Part shown: one piece after another, positions 2,397 through 41,357 of the stretch
Position numbering within the stretch: the stretch's first letter is position 1
How the letters are laid out: the number at the start of each line of letters is the position of its first letter
Source: Pristiophorus japonicus
Lineage: Eukaryota
Assembly (NCBI RefSeq): GCF_044704955.1
Contig: NC_091997.1
Span: forward strand, 85,808,001-85,872,000
Direction of reading: 5' to 3'
Length of the DNA: 64,000 bases
Notes under the pieces: generated by a model
Database searches by the model: none
Told to the model about the DNA's origin: nothing
Seen by the model: the letters and a program-made list of their open reading frames with translations, nothing else
Program-made: the position numbers and the translations under genes

Positions 2397-2662
2397 GCAG
2401 TGACCGCACGGACCATATACCGCAGGTTGAAACCTCTTTAGCCATTGAACTCAAACCAGACGGCCAATCGCAGCCCAAAGAGGACAGTAAGGAGGATCCC
2501 GTTGCTCTGTCTAATGAGCAGACTTATTCTTTGATAGGTTGCCCGGGGACAGGGAGCCCAGGAGACACGGAGACAAGGTCTCGGCTGGAGGAAGATGATC
2601 CACAACCTGGCCCGTTAGAGATGGAAGAAAATCCTATTTATGCTAAAATAGAGGAAGCCTGA
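2397..2662 (+). CDS. Gene A terminal coding exon: acidic cytoplasmic tail with QTYSLI and NPIYAKI tyrosine motifs
   Basis: ttctAG acceptor after an 89-nt intron; open frame (C)SDRTDHIPQVETSLAIELKPDG...NEQTYSLIGCPG...EMEENPIYAKIEEA*; not in ORF track. Confidence 0.8.
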
Positions 2663-16326: not shown

Positions 16327-18408
16327 TGTTGTGTATCTGTAAAGCATGCACTCCCATGTTCCACCATCCCAGCATCCCTTGGGAACACTCTATATAAGCC
16401 GGCCCCTAAGGCTTGTTCCTCACTCTGGAGTGTCTGATTAAAGACTGAGGTCACTGTTACTTTAACCTCCCAGTGTGCAGCCTCATAATAGGAACATAAT
16501 AACTGGTGACGAGAATACGAATCCAACGCAAAGATGCAACAAACTGTGGGCATCCTGGAGAAGTTCTCGGAGGGTGAGGACTGGGAAGCCTATGTCGAAT
16601 GGCTAGACCAGTACTTTGTAGCCAACGAGCTGGACGGAGAAGGAAGCGCTGCAAAAAGGAGAGCGGTCCTCCTCATGGTCTGCGGGGCACCGACCTACAG
16701 CCTCATGAGGAATCTTCTGGCTCTGGTGAAACCCACAGATAAGTCGTATGAGGAGCTGTGTACACTGGTTTGGGAGCATCTTAACCTGAGCGAGAGCGTG
16801 CTGATGGCGAGGTATCGGTTCTATACGTGCCAGTGATCTGAAGGTCAGGAAGTGGCGAGCTACGTCGCCAAGCTAAGGCGACTTGCAGGACAATGTGAGT
16901 TTGATGGCTACCTGGAGCAAATGCTCAGAGACCTTTTTGTACTGGGCATTGGCCACGAGACCATCCTATGAAAACTTTTGACTTAGAGACACCGACCCTC
17001 AGTAAGGCCATTGCGATAGCACAGATGTTTATGTCCACCAGTGATAACACCAAACAAATCTCTCAGCACACAAGTGCTAGCAATGTTCATAAATTAACTG
17101 CAACTGTGTTTGCGAGCAGAAATGTACAGGGCAGAACCCACGAATCTGCAACTGCCAGCAGGCCTCAGGTGACCCAGATGACTCAGAGTCCCCAAAAAAG
17201 GATGAATGCAAGGCAATTCACACCTTGTTGGCGTTGTGGAGGCTTCCATTCAGCCTATTCATGCCACTTCAAAGGGTATGTTTGCAAGAGCTATGGAACA
17301 ATGGGGCACCTCCAATGAGCTTGCAAGCTCTGCAAAACCTGCTAACCACCACGTGGCAGAGGAAGATCAGTCCATGGTGGGTCAAAGCAATTTCGAGCCT
17401 CAGAGAGAGGAGGTAGATGCTGAAGTACATGGGGTGCACACATTTTCAACAAAATGTCCACCTATAATGCTAAACGTAAAATTGAATGCCTTACCCGTAG
17501 CCATAGAACTGGACAGTGGTGCTAGCCAATCTATCGTGAGCAAAAAGATGTTTGAGAGACTGTGGCGCAACAAAGCATTCAGACCAGCCCTGAGCCCCAT
17601 CCACATGAAACTGAGAACGTACACCAAAGAGCTTATCACTGTCCTGGGCAGCGCCATGGTCAAGGTCACCTACGAGGGCACGGTGCACGAACTGCCACTC
17701 TGGATTGTCCCGGGCGATGGCCCCACACTGCTTGGAAGGAGCTAGCTGGGCAAAATCCGCTGTAACTGGAATGATATCCGAGCGCTATCACATGTCAATG
17801 AGGCCTCATGTACCCAGGTTCTTAACAAATTTCCTTCCCTTTTTCAGCCAGGCATTGGAAACTTTTCCGGGGCGAAGGTGCGGATCGATTTGGTCCCAGA
17901 GGCAGGACCCATTCACCACAAGGCGCGAGCGGTACCTCACATGATGAGAGAGAGAGTGGAAATCGAGCTGGACAGGCTGCAACGCGAGGGCATCATCTCC
18001 CCAGTGGAATTCAGCGAGTGGGCCAGCCCGATTGTTCCAGTACTCAAAAGTGATGGCACGGTCAGGATTTGCGCCAGCCCAGCGAGGGCACAGCCAACAC
18101 ACCAGAACAGACATTTGTACCAAGGCGGTCCACCAAGGAAAGAAAGGCTCCCAACCGCCTCACCTAGTAAATAGTTTTCACTTTGACTTTGGGTGGGGAG
18201 TGATGTTGTGTATCTGTAAAACATGCACTCCCATGTTCCACCACCACGGAGCTCATCCCCTGAAGTCCCAAGGGATCCCAGCATCCCTTGGGAGCACTGT
18301 CTATAAGCCGGCCCCGAAGGCCTGTTCCTCACTCTGGAGTGTCTGATTAAAGACTGAGGTCACTTTAACCTCCCTGTGTGCAGCCTCATCTGTGTTAGGA
18401 ACACAATA
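16327..18408 (+). mobile_element. Gypsy B: internally deleted Ty3/Gypsy element (gag, PR, start of RT joined to IN tail)
   Basis: LTRs 16327-16501 and 18204-18408; TSD AAAGG (16322-16326, 18409-18413); PBS TGGTGACGAG; PPT GGGTGGGGAG; RT breaks off after DGTVRIC (~18072). Confidence 0.92.
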
Positions 18409-18561: not shown

Positions 18562-18616
18562 ATGGCGCTTGGTGCTCTGTTTGTGGGTCTTTTCCTTCTG
18601 TTCCAACATGTTGTAG
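18562..18616 (+). CDS. Gene B exon 1: signal peptide MALGALFVGLFLLFQHVV(G)
   Basis: Good Kozak gaaATGG, hydrophobic 18 codons + 1 nt, GTAAGG donor, phase 1 as typical for IgSF leader exons. Confidence 0.8.
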
Positions 18617-33569: not shown

Positions 33570-34110
33570 ATAGGATATACAGCACAGAAACAGGCCATTC
33601 GGCCCAACCAGTCCATTCCAGTGTTTTTGCTCCACTCGAGCCTCCTCCCGTCTTTCCTCATCTAAAACTATCAGCATAACCTTCTATTCTCTTCTCCCTC
33701 ATATGCCTGTCTAGCCTCCCCTTAAATTCATCTACATTATTCACTTCAACCACACCCTGCGGTAGCGAGTTCCACATTCTCACCACTCTCTGGGTAAAGG
33801 AGTTTCTTCTGAATTCCCGATTGGATTTCTTGGTGACTATCTTATATTGATGGCCTCTAGTTATGCTCTTCCCCACAAGTGGAAACATTGTCTCCGTATC
33901 CACTCTATCAAAATCGCTCATCATTTTAAAGACCTCTGTTAGGTCACCCCTCAGCCTTCTTTTTTCAAGATAAAAGAGACCCAACCTTTTCATCCTTTCC
34001 TCATAAGTATACCCTCGCATTTCTGGTATCATCCTTATAAATCTTCTCTGAACCCTCTCCAGTGCTTCCATATCCTTTTTATAATACGGCGACCAGAACT
34101 GTACGCAGAA
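33570..34110 (-). mobile_element. CR1 LINE 3' fragment
   Basis: ALERVQRRFIRMIP...RRLRGDL...FTQRVVRMWNSLP. Confidence 0.9.
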
Positions 34111-34916: not shown

Positions 34917-35717
34917 TACTCTAAGGCCCTGGAATTGGTGGAAGCTAAGTTCTGCCCAAAGGACCGCTGAGATCCTGACGGTACTTTGGCCGGAAGTTTC
35001 ATGGAAAAATCTTGGAAAGACCGCCCAGCGGCAAAAATGGGACTTACGCCCTGAATCTGGGCGGCAGCGGGAGGTAGTTCCCATTCTCGGCGGCAAATGC
35101 AATCCTCAGCTAAGTACGAGGGCGGAACTGATAAAATTAAACATTTTCACAAAATTAAAAAAACACTAGAAATCCTTCAGCGGACCCCATCCACCCGAAT
35201 CCCTGCAAAAGAAATAAAGAAAAGAACTGCACTTACCTTTTATTGCAGGTCTTCATACTTACCGTTGAGGTTAGACCTGCCTTCACGCGGCGGGCTTGTC
35301 CCCTGCTGGAGCGGAGGACCGCCCGGACCAAACTGTCAGCATTTACAATCATTCTCTCTGAAACTGACCCGAACTTCAGGATGTTGTGCATCTAAACGCG
35401 GAAATCCTGACGTTGCGGTCAGTCATTCAACACTCTGACACAGGCGACGCTGTGGATCCCCTACCACCGACCCCACCCCGTATTGCCGGCAATCAGTGAA
35501 ATCAGTGCAGCTTTCCCACGCTAATTTTGCTGTTAAACACTCCATGAAATGTTAAGCCTTGTTAGATTAGGTGTAACTGGGGTTTTGACCAACAGTGTAT
35601 TGACTGCAAAAAAAAAATCACGATTCCTTAATTTCCTGTGAGAGGCTTTGTTTCACGTTGACTGTTTAATGAGCTTTCCTGTCTCTATCTCTATCCCATT
35701 CTTCCCTTTCCCCGCAG

Positions 35718-36119
35718 GATCCACTTATCTCTTCTTCCGAGGACCAGGAGATGTCACCACTCTGCAATGCAACGTGCCCACCGGTGCTGGGAATAAAGTA
35801 ACCTTGTGCAGCTCCAGTGATCCCAGGTCAGAAATGGGTGAAATAAAATGTCAGCACCCAAAGAACGAGAAGCCATGTGATGAAAATATCGGTCCTCAAG
35901 GGAGAAAAGGACACAGTGAGCCAGAGTGTACAAAATGCAAATTACATGACGACCAAACGGAGTCTCTGACATTCGCTGTGAAGACGATTAACTCGATGGT
36001 GTTTACCTTCATGGCTCAGGATTCCACAGAAGGAGGGGCATTGGAGTGTCCGTCCTGGCTCACACTGTCACAGCCGGGATGTGAAAACCACGACTTGTTC
36101 TTTGTGATAACCCAGGATG
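35718..36119 (+). CDS. Gene B exon 2: atypical cysteine-rich extracellular domain (134 codons, 8 Cys), possibly divergent Ig fold
   Basis: Strong polypyrimidine tract + gcAG, GTAGGT donor, phase 1-1, open frame (G)STYLFFRGPGDVTTLQC...GCENHDLFFVITQD. Confidence 0.75.
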
Positions 36120-36294
36120 GTAGGTGCACTGGGGCAGTACCGCGGTAGGGATCAGGGAAGGTATTGGGGCAATATCCGGGGAGGTATTGGGTATGTATCG
36201 GGAGAGGTATTGCGGGGACACATAATGTAAGGTATAAAAACAGAAAATGCTGGAAATCTCAGCAGGTCAGGCAGCATCTGTGGAGAGGAAGCAG

Positions 36295-36331
36295 AGTTAA
36301 CGTTTCGGGTCGATGACCCTTCGTCAGAACT
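36295..36331 (-). ncRNA. Minimal hammerhead ribozyme motif
   Basis: AGUU-CUGACGA-A-GGGUC-AUC-GACCC-GAAAC-GUU-AACU on minus strand. Confidence 0.65.
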
Positions 36332-38571
36332 GGAGAGTGTTCAGAAAGAACACATTCTGAACAAGCCCTGAAAGGGAGAGGGGAAGAAAGAACAAAAGGG
36401 AAGGTCTGTAATAGGGTGGAAGACAGGAGAGATTAGAGAGACAAAAGGGATGATGGGCCAAATTCAAATGGTAATGCCAGGAGTGAGAAAAACATTAGTC
36501 AAGATAGGGTGTGAATGGTGGGATAATGACCAACTGCCATTAGAGACACGGAGAAATGGGGGAGGCAGTGGCGAAGGGAGTCAGAGATTGGCAGAGGTTC
36601 TGGTCTGAAATTGTTGAACTCAATATTGAGTCCAGAAGGCTGTAAAGTGGCTAAACGAAAGATGATGCCACATGTATGCTCTCGACCTCTCTCTTCAGCA
36701 GCACCGAATCACTCTATCTCTAAGCTGTCCTGGTCCGCAGTTCCATTTCATCCTTCGCCTCATCCGGGGCTTTAGCCAAAACCTTTTTCCTTCCTTTCAG
36801 ATGTCAAGGATCGTAAACTTCAACAACTCTTGGACACCAATGCCCCCTCCGAAACCTTCTTCCCCCACAATTCCCTCTGATCCCATCCCTTCTTCCAATC
36901 TCACCCCCTGCCGTGTTTTCACTATCCCCTCTGACCTTCCGCTCTCTGACCCCGAACAATCAGTCCTCAGCAAAGGACTGAGCTTCATCCCCTTATGCCC
37001 CCACCTCAATGAATATCGAGCTCGCACGTTGCTGAGCTATTTTTCCAGTGACTTCGTCTCTGTGCCCACTTCTTCAGCCAGGAGTCTTCCCCCATTCTCT
37101 CATTTTCAGAACTCTCGCTCTACCTGGGCCCCTCCCTCTGACCTCTTACCCTCTCTGGACTTCCTCATTGCAAACTGCCAAGGGGACATCGGCCGTCTCA
37201 ATTTCTCTGCTCCAACCTAACACCCTCTGAACTTGCAAACTCCACTCGCTCAGATCCAACCCCAACCTTGTGAATTAAACCTGCTGACAAGGGCAGCGCT
37301 GTTGATGTTTGGCGAACCAACCTCTACCTTGCAGAGGCTGATCGTCAACTCTCTGACACCTCCTCCTACCTCTCCCTGGATCATGACCCCACTACTGAAC
37401 ATCAAGCCATCATTTCCCAGACCATTACTGACCCCATCTCCTCTGGAGATCTTCCCTCCACAGCCACCAACCTCATAGTTCCCCAACCCCACACAGCCCG
37501 CTGATTCCCACCGTTACCTGGACTACACATCCTCCCACCCTGCATCCTGTAAGGACTCCATTCCATTCTGCCAGTTTCTCCGTCGCATCTGCTCTGACGA
37601 CGCCACCTTCGACACTAGTGCCGCTGACATGTCTTCCTTTTTCCTCAACCGAGGATTCCCCTACACTGTGGTTACCATGACCCTTGACCGTGTCCATTCT
37701 ATTTCCTGCACTTCTGCTCTCACCCCTTCCCCTCCCTCTCAGAACCACGACAGGGTCCTCACCTTTCATCCCACCAGCCTCCACGTTCAACGGATCATCC
37801 ACCATTTCCGCCACCTCCAGCATGATTCCACCACCTTCCCCCCCCCCTCTCCATTCTGCAGTCACCCCAAGCAGCTGCCCCCACTTCCCACGGCACCTTC
37901 CCATGCAAGCGCAGGAGATGCACCACCTGCCCTTTTACCCCCTCCCTCCCCACTATCCAGGGCCTCAAATACTCCTTCCATGTGAAACAGCGATTTATTT
38001 GTTCTTCATTCAATTTAGTATGCTGTATTCGTTGCTCACGATGTAGTCTCCTCTACATTGGGGAGACCAAGTGTAGATTGGGTGACCACTTTGTGGAGCA
38101 CCTCCGTTTAGTCTGCAAGTGTGACCCTGAGCTTCCAGTGGCCTGTCACTTTAATTCTCCACTCCACTCTCACTCTGACCTCTCCGCCCTCGGCCTCTTA
38201 CACTGTTCCAACGAAGTTCAACTCAAGCTCGAGGAACAGCACCTCATCTTTTGTTTAGGCACTTTACAGCCTTCTGGACTCAACATTGAGTTCAACAATT
38301 TCAGAGCATGGCCACTGCCAATCTCCACCCCACCCCCCGACCCAGAGCCTGTTTGTTTCTTTTGTTTCTCCGTGTCTCTAATGGTAGTTGGTCATTATCC
38401 CACCACTCACACCCTATCTTGACTAATGTTTTCCTATTTGAAGTTGGACCATCATCCCTTTTGTCTCTAATCTCTCCTGTCTTCCACCCTATCACAGACC
38501 TTCCCTTTTGTTCTTTCTTCCCCTCCCCCTTTCAGTGCTGATCAAGAATCTGTTCTTTTCGAACACTCTCC

Positions 38572-38608
38572 AGTTCTGACGAAGGGTCATCGACCCGAAA
38601 CGTTATCT
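38572..38608 (+). ncRNA. Minimal hammerhead ribozyme motif, sense to gene B
   Basis: AGUU-CUGACGA-A-GGGUC-AUC-GACCC-GAAAC-GUU-AUCU; one mismatch in stem I. Confidence 0.6.
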
Positions 38609-38997
38609 CTGCATTCTCTCCACAGATGCTGCCTGACTTGCTGAGATTTCCAGCATTTTCTGTGTTTATTGCAGATTCCAGCATCTGCAGTATTTCGCTT
38701 TTGCAAAATGTAAGGTATTAGGGGAGATAGTTTGCAGCTATTGGGGAGATACTGGAGGAGGTTTTAGTGCGGATAGCTGTCATTGGGAAAATGTTAAAGT
38801 CTTTATTAAGATGAAATCACTGCATATGCAGATAAAGAGTAAATAGTGAGAAGTAGCTGGCACGGGTTTCAAACTGTCCAGGAGGTAACAGACATGGTAC
38901 ATGGACGTAGTGTACATGGTCTTTAGGAAATTCTTTGATAAAGTACCATACTAGAGATTATTATATTAACAAATATTCTTTTCAATGTTGTTTATAG

Positions 38998-39477
38998 ATT
39001 CAGCTGATATATCTCCTATTGAAGAAAACTCTTTGTCGCTGACAGTGTCAGAGGGAGAGAATGTGACTTTACCCTGCCAGTTTCAGAATAGAAAACTACT
39101 CGCCTTCACTCTGTTTTGGTTCAGATCTGGAAATGTCAATAAGTGTCTGCACTCTGTTTCCATTGACGCTCAGGGGCCATATTCTAACCCACTCTGTTGT
39201 GTGGATAGAGAGTCGTCACAAAGAATCTCTACCCAAAGCTCATACAATCCTTTGGTTAGCCGCCAGTCTCACAACCTTACTATTCACTCAGCGGGCCTGG
39301 TGGACACTGGGAGGTATCTCTGTGCTGTACACAGTCAGGATTCAGGGAAACATGTCTGGAAGATTGCAGCAAACATCTCCCTTGTGACAGAGCCCAGTGC
39401 AGAAACTTCAGACACTCCCACCTCAACATCTGGAATATCCTCAGTGACCGGAAGCATTACTCCTACAAATATACAAA
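38998..39477 (+). CDS. Gene B exon 3: V-set immunoglobulin domain plus Ser/Thr-rich stalk
   Basis: LTVSEGENVTLPC, LFWFR, HNLTI, DTGRYLC canonical V-set motifs; tatAG acceptor, GTAAGT donor, phase 1-1; N-glycosylation sequons NVT, NLT, NIS. Confidence 0.93.
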
Positions 39478-39639
39478 GTAAGTGATACAATCTAGAACAT
39501 GATGTGAACTATTTTATATCAATAATTCAATATAAATAATATAAGTAATTCTTTCACACAATGTCCCAGACTCCTCCATCAGATGTACATATATCATGGC
39601 ATTGCACAGACTGAACTTAATGTGGTTTCCCCTCTGCAG

Positions 39640-39756
39640 GTCCTTACTCCAGTTGCAGTGACATGCGCATTTGTGTTTTGGTTCTGTACTTGGTTGTGCT
39701 AATTTGCATTGATGGAGCACTTTGCATAATCCGAAGGAAATGGCAATCTGCCAAAG
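39640..39756 (+). CDS. Gene B exon 4: transmembrane segment (S)PYSSCSDMRICVLVLYLVVLICIDGALCIIRRKWQSAK
   Basis: ctgcAG acceptor, GTAAGC donor; 21-residue hydrophobic stretch followed by RRK stop-transfer. Confidence 0.85.
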
Positions 39757-39869
39757 GTAAGCAAGAGCTTTAAAATCATTGATCTACATCCAGAAAATTG
39801 CATTAAAGTACAGAATTATTACATTGATTTTTTAATTCGTAGTTCTAATCTTATCATATTCATTGTGAC

Positions 39870-41325: not shown

Positions 41326-41357
41326 TGATGGAGGCAAAAGTGAAATCCAGGGAATAA
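41326..41357 (+). CDS. Gene B exon 5: short cytoplasmic tail (V)MEAKVKSRE*
   Basis: cttAG acceptor paralogous to 2273; entered in phase 1 it gives TAA at 41355-41357; downstream donor mutated GT to GG (41361). Confidence 0.55.

What the first reader, a model, noticed from the sequence alone, without database searches (positions are those of the whole stretch)
35718..36119. Unrecognised 8-cysteine membrane-distal domain
Seen: phase 1-1 exon with an Ig-like start (GDVTTLQC) and a G-strand-like end (LFFVIT) but no C-strand Trp or DxGxYxC; 8 Cys, six in the N-terminal half including CTKC. Inference: a highly divergent Ig fold with a disulfide-rich insertion, or a new ligand-binding module. It is the most novel coding element here.
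Basis: partly seen in the sequence, partly recalled or inferred. Interest (0 to 1): 0.78.

Follow-up and report, generated by a model that had tools for sequence, protein, structure and literature searches.

The report
Divergent Ig-like head of shark receptor
This exon encodes the outermost domain of a cell-surface receptor family found only in sharks; it is most likely a heavily remodelled antibody-type (Ig-like) domain, but no database recognises it and its fold could not be confirmed.

Summary
The exon is real. It is an open, phase 1-1 exon of 133 codons with 8 Cys and good splice sites. Intron-less contigs of three public runs end at its two edges. The public Pristiophorus japonicus (Japanese sawshark) protein P0020, "uncharacterized protein isoform X1", contains it letter for letter.

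The domain has relatives in 12 shark species and nowhere else in my searches. It always lies between a signal peptide and an ordinary V-set Ig domain, in receptors with either a long tyrosine-rich tail or a short tail.

The family consensus has 9 Cys. These include a B-strand Cys and an F-strand "VFTC" that this copy has changed to "VFTF". The position of the Ig core Trp holds Cys in 18 of 20 copies and Trp in the two Heptranchias copies.

Every repeated database signal is Ig, but all are below threshold (Pfam, PDB, ESM Atlas). AlphaFold2 failed twice (pLDDT 32).

Best reading (about 0.6): a V-length, highly divergent Ig-like domain with a variable, disulfide-stapled C'-D segment, acting as the ligand-binding head of a paired-receptor family. 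A new fold is not excluded.

The scan had already met this family on neighbouring DNA upstream (s1-877523, s1-878984, s1-874700, s1-874765).

The parts
18562..18616 (+). Exon 1 of gene B: ATG and an 18-codon signal peptide, plus the first base of the next codon (phase 1 donor)
   Evidence: Sequence read; tblastn of P0020 residues 1-20
35718..36119 (+). The finding: a phase 1-1 exon encoding the 133-aa membrane-distal cysteine-rich domain
   Evidence: sequence, frame, splice sites; contigs end at 35716/35718 and 36119; exact match inside P0020
36008..36010 (+). Codon TTC (Phe97) at the position where 17 of 20 family members have the F-strand Cys
35813..35959 (+). Residues 32-80: the least conserved, charged segment, holding Cys44, 53, 70 and 73 (the C'-D region or 'insertion')
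   Evidence: majority fraction 0.47, against 0.64-0.75 in the other segments
38998..39477 (+). Next exon: V-set Ig domain (5 Cys) plus a Ser/Thr-rich stalk
   Evidence: sequence; Pfam V-set 35.9 bits, cut-off 26; TCR V-alpha, PD-1 and pIgR as nearest solved chains
39640..39756 (+). Transmembrane exon, with Arg before and Asp inside the hydrophobic stretch
   Evidence: record 8 (844-nt contig holds it with 0 differences)
41326..41357 (+). Last coding exon of gene B: a short tail ending in a stop
   Evidence: nine of its residues located at 41328-41354, followed by a stop; C-terminus of P0020. That the exon starts at 41326 is inferred from the phase.
2399..2659 (+). Last coding exon of the upstream neighbour (gene A, long tyrosine-rich tail)
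   Evidence: P0024 residues 471-557, 100% identity

Best explanation
The exon encodes the membrane-distal domain of a shark-only family of type I receptors. The architecture is signal peptide, this domain, a V-set Ig domain, a Ser/Thr stalk, a TM segment, and then either a long tyrosine-rich tail or a short tail with a charged TM.

I read the domain as a very divergent Ig-like beta-sandwich of V-set length; the B-strand Cys and the F-strand position are 80 residues apart. The proposed layout is: strand A at TYLFF, B at TTLQC, C at KVTLC, E at SLTFAV, F at MVFT(C/F), and G at either PSWLTL or LFFVIT.

The C-strand core Trp has been replaced by Cys30. I infer that Cys30 bonds Cys73 of the CxxC. 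The C'-D region (residues 32-80) has become a charged, fast-evolving, disulfide-stapled segment. The F-G region carries two invariant Cys (110, 121).

In this copy and its upstream neighbour the canonical F-strand Cys is Phe, so the classical Ig disulfide is absent.

Function (inferred): the domain is the ligand-contacting head of a paired inhibitory/activating receptor array, and the variable 32-80 segment gives specificity.

Shown: the exon, its splicing in this gene family, its conservation, the Cys pattern and the architecture. Inferred: the fold, the disulfide pairs and ligand binding.
For: Exon and gene.

Family and range. One search found 5 clusters among 1.84 billion representatives, all sharks by name. 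One search found 27 proteins at E<=1e-10, all sharks.

Ig pins in relatives. Cys17 is present in 20/20. Position 97 is Cys in 17/20. Position 30 is Cys in 18/20 and Trp in the 2 Heptranchias copies, which also lack Cys73. Trp lies 13 residues after the B Cys.

E-F motif. It aligns residue for residue with titin's DSGLYTCTVKNS.

Pfam. Whale-shark P0005's best I-set stretch is residues 84-124, inside this domain. For the Heptranchias member, Ig_2 aligns 11-115 to profile positions 15-77 of 79, E 0.018. Across 20 members, Ig_2 hits 7, ig 5 and I-set 4; all seven other families listed hit one member each.

PDB. Profile A1 gave 3 of 3 hits that are Ig domains (titin E 0.034). Profile A3 gave 2 of 2. 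The whale-shark member gave 8 of 8, best E 0.013.

ESM Atlas. For the whale-shark domain, 9 of the 10 best named neighbours are in the Ig clan, scores 0.88-0.90.

Exon type. Phase 1-1, as in the neighbouring V exon.

Distal-head reading. Between species the domain diverges faster than the V domain: 49.4% against 69.1% mean identity, lower in 176 of 177 pairs. Residues 32-80 are the least conserved part. Gene A (P0024, long tail) and gene B (short tail) share 96% and 95% identical ectodomain parts.
Against: No Ig profile reaches its curated cut-off in any of the 20 members. The window's own copy gets no Ig hit at all: only GF_recep_IV at E 0.015 and GPR15L at E 1.7, and integrin alpha-5 at E 0.33 in PDB.

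AlphaFold2 gave pLDDT 32.4 (12 rows) and 31.6 (20 rows). Foldseek on the second model found nothing, best E 3.3.

hhalign against the family's own V domain gave probability 0.2%. BLASTP between the two exons gave E 2.7.

The ESM Atlas top hits for both queries are unnamed clusters. The window copy scored only 0.88, with low recognition.

The Cys co-losses are not clean. Mustelus P0025 lacks Cys73 alone. Heptranchias P0006 and Carcharodon P0026 lack Cys53/54 alone.

An invariant 110-121 pair only 10 residues apart is hard to fit to a normal G strand.

No ligand, tissue or protein data exist.
Confidence: 0.6

Rival explanations
1. The domain is a fold of its own: a shark-restricted, disulfide-rich ligand-binding module. 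Its Ig-like motifs are convergent or remnants, and it does not form an Ig sandwich.
For: No profile or structure library recognises it above threshold. Two AlphaFold2 runs failed outright, although Ig domains usually fold well even from thin alignments (my experience, not a call). There is no relation to the adjacent V domain. It has nine Cys and is 133 residues long, longer than ordinary Ig domains. The top ESM Atlas neighbours are unnamed clusters.
Against: All recurrent weak hits are Ig, and they fall on the same E-F-G stretch in the right order. Cys17, position 30 (Trp in Heptranchias) and Cys97 have canonical Ig spacing. The exon phase and the gene context are those of the Ig superfamily.
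Confidence: 0.27
2. In this particular copy (gene B) the domain is decaying. Loss of the F-strand Cys leaves Cys17 unpaired, so the copy is misfolded or on its way to becoming a pseudogene.
For: Phe97 replaces a Cys kept in 17 of 20 members. At 35825 all contigs laid read G, not the window's A, so no contig over the 5' half is provably gene B.
Against: The reading frame and both splice sites are intact. The three Phe97 copies form one clade (support 95/90), and one of them is a full-length long-tail receptor, P0024. So the change is shared by at least two intact genes. An 844-nt spliced contig holds gene B's TM exon with 0 differences, and contigs over 35913-36119 differ by 1-2 letters in about 206. 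Ig domains without the core disulfide are known (established knowledge, e.g. CD2 domain 1; recalled).
Confidence: 0.08
3. It is not a coding exon: a chance open frame.
For: None beyond the lack of a database domain.
Against: It is conserved in 12 shark species. Spliced contigs exist. It is present in public gene models.
Confidence: 0.01

Closest known systems
I-set / C2-type Ig domains (best weak matches: titin Ig, PDB 3puc; CEACAM5; MuSK; LRIG1)
   Same: B-strand xxLxC. E-strand LTFxV followed by D/N-S-x-V-F-T-C, with the spacing of the canonical DxGxYxC. xQNSxG after the F Cys. Phase 1-1 exon.
   Different: All scores are below threshold (best E 0.013). There are 80 residues between the two Cys, against about 40-60 (recalled). 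Cys replaces the core Trp in 18 of 20 members. There are four extra Cys between C and E and two invariant Cys after F. The window copy lacks the F Cys.
V-set Ig domains (for example the next exon of the same gene)
   Same: Overall length, the B-to-F distance, the exon type, and the position in an immune-type receptor.
   Different: No detectable sequence relation (hhalign probability 0.2%; BLASTP E 2.7). No WxxQ, no J-like FGxG. V-set does not appear among the Pfam matches listed for the 20 members.
Paired activating/inhibitory Ig-superfamily receptor arrays (KIR, LILR, SIRP, CD300, teleost NITR; named from memory)
   Same: A tandem multigene array. Near-identical ectodomains are joined to either a long tyrosine-bearing tail or a short tail with a charged TM. 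Copies group by species.
   Different: The head domain is unlike theirs. The tyrosine motifs are not canonical ITIMs (by eye). No orthology to any named family was found. Range is sharks only in my searches.
Cysteine-rich receptor modules (growth-factor receptor domain IV / furin-like)
   Same: Many Cys within about 90 residues.
   Different: Only 1 of 20 members hits it, at E 0.015 and 15.5 bits against a cut-off of 29.5. The Cys spacing is not repeated. Rejected.

Membership tests
Immunoglobulin-like domain (Pfam Ig clan) | Score at or above the curated cut-off of an Ig-clan profile | tested here: not met
   0 of 20 members reach a cut-off. Below cut-off: Ig_2 in 7, ig in 5, I-set in 4. The window copy has no Ig hit.
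Immunoglobulin-like domain (Pfam Ig clan) | Conserved B-strand and F-strand Cys pair | tested here: not met
   The window copy has Cys17 but Phe97. The pair is present in 17 of 20 family members.
Immunoglobulin-like domain (Pfam Ig clan) | Core Trp in strand C, about 12-14 residues after the B Cys | tested here: not met
   Position 30 is Cys in the window and in 18 of 20 members. It is Trp only in the 2 Heptranchias copies.
Immunoglobulin-like domain (Pfam Ig clan) | E-F motif (LxIxxV...DxGxYxC) | tested here: inconclusive
   A degenerate form is present (SLTFAVKTINSMVFTF). Relatives have DSTVFTC, which aligns to titin's DSGLYTC. E-values are 0.013-0.066.
Immunoglobulin-like domain (Pfam Ig clan) | Two-sheet beta-sandwich with Ig strand order | tested here: inconclusive
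   AlphaFold2 pLDDT was 32.4 and 31.6. Foldseek found no match. The strands in the poor models fall where A, B, C, E and F are expected, but that carries little weight.
Immunoglobulin-like domain (Pfam Ig clan) | One domain per phase 1-1 exon | tested here: met
Paired activating/inhibitory immune receptors | Near-identical ectodomains on long-tail and short-tail/charged-TM partners in one cluster | tested here: met
   Gene A (P0024) against gene B (P0020): N-domain 96.2% and V domain 94.8% identical, with different tails. Gene A's last exon is at 2399-2659 of the same window.
Paired activating/inhibitory immune receptors | Canonical ITIM/ITSM in the long tail; adaptor pairing of the short form | not tested
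   By eye the tyrosine motifs are non-canonical. Adaptor binding is not testable with these tools.

The most novel reading that the evidence does not exclude
The family records a natural re-wiring of the Ig core. The Trp 'pin' of strand C was exchanged for a second inter-sheet disulfide (Cys30-Cys73). Heptranchias lost that bond and put Trp back at the same position (a single base change from Cys). With extra disulfides in place, sawshark copies could then drop the canonical B-F disulfide (Cys97 to Phe). If so, this shark-only domain is a stepwise series of alternative Ig cores, with a hypervariable, stapled C'-D segment as a new kind of recognition surface. The bolder alternative, that it is not an Ig fold at all, has a similar probability.
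Probability: 0.3. Interest if true: 0.6.

Novelty: new variant of a known kind. Interest (0 to 1): 0.42.

Why it matters
Sharks are the oldest living lineage with antibody-based immunity, and their germline-encoded innate receptors are barely charted. Here a whole tandem array of paired receptors carries, at its tip, a domain that no family library names and that AlphaFold2 cannot fold.

If it is a re-wired Ig domain, it shows how far the Ig core can drift (Trp to Cys, loss of the canonical disulfide) and still be kept across both major shark clades. If it is not, it is a new ligand-binding module.

Either way, it is the most likely ligand-binding surface of an unstudied shark receptor system. 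It is a clear target for structure determination and ligand screening.

Tried and rejected
Cysteine-rich growth-factor-receptor domain: 1 of 20 members, below cut-off. Rejected.

Duplicate of the neighbouring V domain: rejected. My first hhalign run, with -glob, was uninformative.

Paralogue of the exon inside the window: none. The self-tblastn gave nothing better than E 1.2.

Structure route: two AlphaFold2 jobs failed (window copy first, 12 rows; Heptranchias copy first, 20 rows). Foldseek on the second model gave only noise. I did not run the VIA searches, because they drop low-pLDDT stretches.

Disulfide pairs from co-loss. Cys30 and Cys73 are lost together in Heptranchias, and Cys53/54 and Cys70 together in Hemiscyllium. 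But three single losses (P0025, P0006, P0026) keep this a suggestion only. An interdomain disulfide inferred from 9+5 Cys parity does not hold across copies (8, 6 or 10 Cys, always with 5 in the V domain).

Relatives outside sharks. The N-domain search was single-sequence, and my last profile search was cut at E 1e-10.

Literature. Five searches found nothing on this family. I saw search listings and abstract starts only. No paper was opened, and supplements are closed and could hold these loci.

Rows left out. A3, the Cys table and the tree use 20 distinct full-length N-domains. Left out were identical isoform copies, the two repeats of P0001 (1-2 residues different from P0003), and the N-truncated models P0014 and P0031.

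Full report
WHAT IS THERE

Window 35718-36119 on the + strand is preceded by a pyrimidine tract and AG, and followed by GTAGGT. Read from 35720 it gives 133 codons without a stop. It has 8 Cys, at residues 17, 30, 44, 53, 70, 73, 110 and 121.

Two details need correcting. Only four Cys lie in the first half (six within the first 73 residues). There is a Trp (W113), though not at the C-strand position.

Around the exon lie:
- a signal-peptide exon, ATG 18562 to donor 18616;
- a V-set Ig plus Ser/Thr stalk exon at 38998-39477 (Pfam V-set 35.9 bits against a cut-off of 26);
- a TM exon at 39640-39756;
- a short last coding exon whose nine mapped residues at 41328-41354 end in a stop.

All junctions are phase 1.

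IS IT USED?

One read-laying run put Logan contigs of three runs on 35600-39800. The runs belong to one study and one coded organism, and their kind is not on record.

- Contigs stop at 35718 (X1 record 1) and at 35716, within two letters of the edge (X2 record 9). They run on for 329 and 54 letters that do not lie here.
- Contigs stop at 36119 (X2 record 10, X3 record 19).
- Joints skip the intron from 36119 into the V exon.
- A unique intron bin (38843-38983) has no depth in any run.
- An 844-nt contig holds the TM exon with 0 differences.

This is the picture of spliced RNA.

Against a simple reading, several points stand:
- At 35825 every contig reads G where the window has A.
- X1's long contig carries changes that, read by eye, give R36G, E38G and H65Y. 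That is the upstream neighbour's version (P0024).
- The 31 letters at the 36119 joint translate, by eye, to the V-exon start of another paralogue type (as in P0021 and P0022).

So inclusion of this exon type in transcripts is shown. For gene B itself the evidence is good for the 3' half (1-2 differences in about 206 letters) and for the TM exon, but not proven for the 5' half. Contigs can also mix near-identical paralogues.

WHOSE GENOME, AND IS IT ANNOTATED?

A phmmer search of the 133 aa against 1.84 billion representatives found 5 proteins with E<=0.001. All are sharks by their source names.

Two further searches used a region query, and one used a full-length profile. The profile search brought 27 proteins at E<=1e-10, again all sharks. 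Among them, N-domains come from 12 species: Heptranchias, Pristiophorus, Heterodontus, Mustelus, Carcharodon, Cetorhinus, Scyliorhinus torazame, Rhincodon, Stegostoma, two Chiloscyllium species and Hemiscyllium. These span both Squalomorphii and Galeomorphii.

P0020, a Pristiophorus japonicus "uncharacterized protein isoform X1", contains the exon's translation exactly. The window is therefore sawshark DNA, and the exon is already in a public gene model. All family members are named "uncharacterized", except one mis-named "serine-rich adhesin for platelets-like".

P0020, which equals the spliced product, was one row of alignment A2 used.

THE FAMILY PATTERN

Twenty distinct full-length N-domains were aligned (A3). 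The consensus has nine Cys:

| Window position | Members with Cys (of 20) | Exceptions |
|---|---|---|
| 17 | 20 | none |
| 30 | 18 | Trp in both Heptranchias copies |
| 44 | 18 | shifted in two copies |
| 53/54 | 17 | |
| 70 | 19 | |
| 73 | 17 | |
| 97 | 17 | Phe in the window, P0023 and P0024 (all sawshark) |
| 110 | 20 | none |
| 121 | 20 | none |

Codon 97 here is TTC, one change from TGC. The three Phe97 copies form one clade (95/90) in a tree where copies group by species.

Heptranchias lacks Cys30 and Cys73 together. Hemiscyllium lacks Cys53/54 and Cys70 together. But Mustelus P0025, Heptranchias P0006 and Carcharodon P0026 each lack one Cys alone, so pairings are only suggested.

Residues 32-80 are the least conserved segment (0.47 majority fraction against 0.64-0.75 elsewhere). 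They are rich in Lys, Glu and Pro.

IS IT AN IG DOMAIN?

Evidence for:
- Cys17 in TTLQC, position 30 thirteen residues later (the place of the Ig core Trp, and actually Trp in Heptranchias), and VFTC at 97 preceded by D/N-S-x have the canonical order and spacing. The B-to-F distance of 80 residues is V-set-like.
- In whale-shark P0005 the best I-set stretch is residues 84-124, inside this domain.
- In the Heptranchias member, Ig_2 aligns residues 11-115 to profile positions 15-77 of 79.
- Among the 20 members, Ig_2 hits 7, ig 5 and I-set 4. All seven other families listed hit one member each.
- PDB profile searches return only Ig domains: 3 of 3 for A1 and 2 of 2 for A3. The whale-shark member alone returns 8 of 8, best titin at E 0.013.
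- 9 of the 10 best named ESM Atlas neighbours of the whale-shark domain are in the Ig clan.

Evidence against:
- Nothing reaches a curated cut-off.
- The window copy itself gets no Ig hit.
- AlphaFold2 failed twice, with pLDDT 32.4 and 31.6. Foldseek on the second model gave noise.
- hhalign and BLASTP see no relation to the neighbouring V domain.
- The invariant Cys110 and Cys121 are only 10 residues apart. That fits a stapled F-G loop followed by LFFVIT as the G strand better than the G strand that the weak alignments place at PSWLTL.

I put the Ig-like reading at about 0.6 and a separate fold at about 0.27.

HOW IT LIKELY WORKS

The domain is the outermost part of the receptor. Between species it changes faster than the V domain: mean identity 49.4% against 69.1%, lower in 176 of 177 pairs. 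Within the sawshark it is kept at 90-96% among copies.

Gene A has a long tail, and its last exon lies at window 2399-2659, identical to the end of P0024. Gene B has a short tail, with Arg and Asp in and at the TM. The two have 96% and 95% identical ectodomain parts.

This is the layout of paired inhibitory/activating immune receptors. I infer that the domain is the ligand-contacting head and that the variable, stapled 32-80 segment is its specificity surface. Loss of the canonical disulfide in the Phe97 copies is tolerated, presumably because other disulfides hold the domain. None of this is shown experimentally.

COMPARISON AND NOVELTY

The closest known kinds are I-set/C2 Ig domains (motif level) and V-set domains (size), within a paired-receptor architecture. 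The domain fails the formal Ig tests that I could run, so I file it as working like, and probably derived from, an Ig domain, not as a proven member.

Five literature searches found nothing on the family. I saw listings and abstract starts only, and supplements are closed.

Earlier notes of this scan had already met the same family 26-185 kb upstream. Two called the outer domain unclassifiable, one called it Ig-like, and one claimed a range "from sharks to echidna", which I could not test.

VERDICT

This is a real, conserved, already-predicted but unstudied exon. It is probably a strongly re-wired Ig-like domain and possibly a new module. Interest is moderate.

Noticed in passing
window 41326-41357, and P0030 / P0004: Gene B's short tail has close counterparts at the ends of the short forms in Scyliorhinus torazame (P0030) and Mustelus (P0004). 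The short-tail partner therefore looks old and conserved, not a recently dismantled long tail.
   Followed up: partly
window 38998-39003: A second joint (36118 to 39003, cut +1) fits an AG six bases inside the V exon. Gene A's protein P0024 lacks exactly those two residues. This is either a NAGNAG-like alternative acceptor or gene A reads laid on gene B.
   Followed up: partly
P0001 (Heptranchias perlo, 683 aa): The unit of N-domain, V domain and stalk occurs twice in tandem in one predicted protein (residues 20-154 and 317-451 for the N-domains). This is either a duplicated ectodomain or two fused gene models.
   Followed up: no
P0002, P0018, P0019, P0023 (sawshark isoforms): Predicted isoforms skip the V exon but keep the cysteine-rich domain, joined directly to the stalk or TM. 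No listed isoform skips the cysteine-rich domain.
   Followed up: no
window 17849-17941: The last 31 residues of isoform P0023 map here at 100% identity, about 600 bases upstream of gene B's start codon. This is an alternative 3' exon of the upstream gene reaching next to gene B.
   Followed up: no
window 39640-39756: The short-form membrane region, with a Cys just outside, an Arg at the outer edge and an Asp (Asn or His in some species) inside, is conserved in six species' short forms. It is adaptor-like and possibly disulfide-linked.
   Followed up: no
window 36164-38842 and 33658-34071: The intron after the exon is filled with repeats that the runs cover at very high depth. There are retroelement-like ORFs, including a reverse-transcriptase-like one on the minus strand at 33658-34071.
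   Followed up: no
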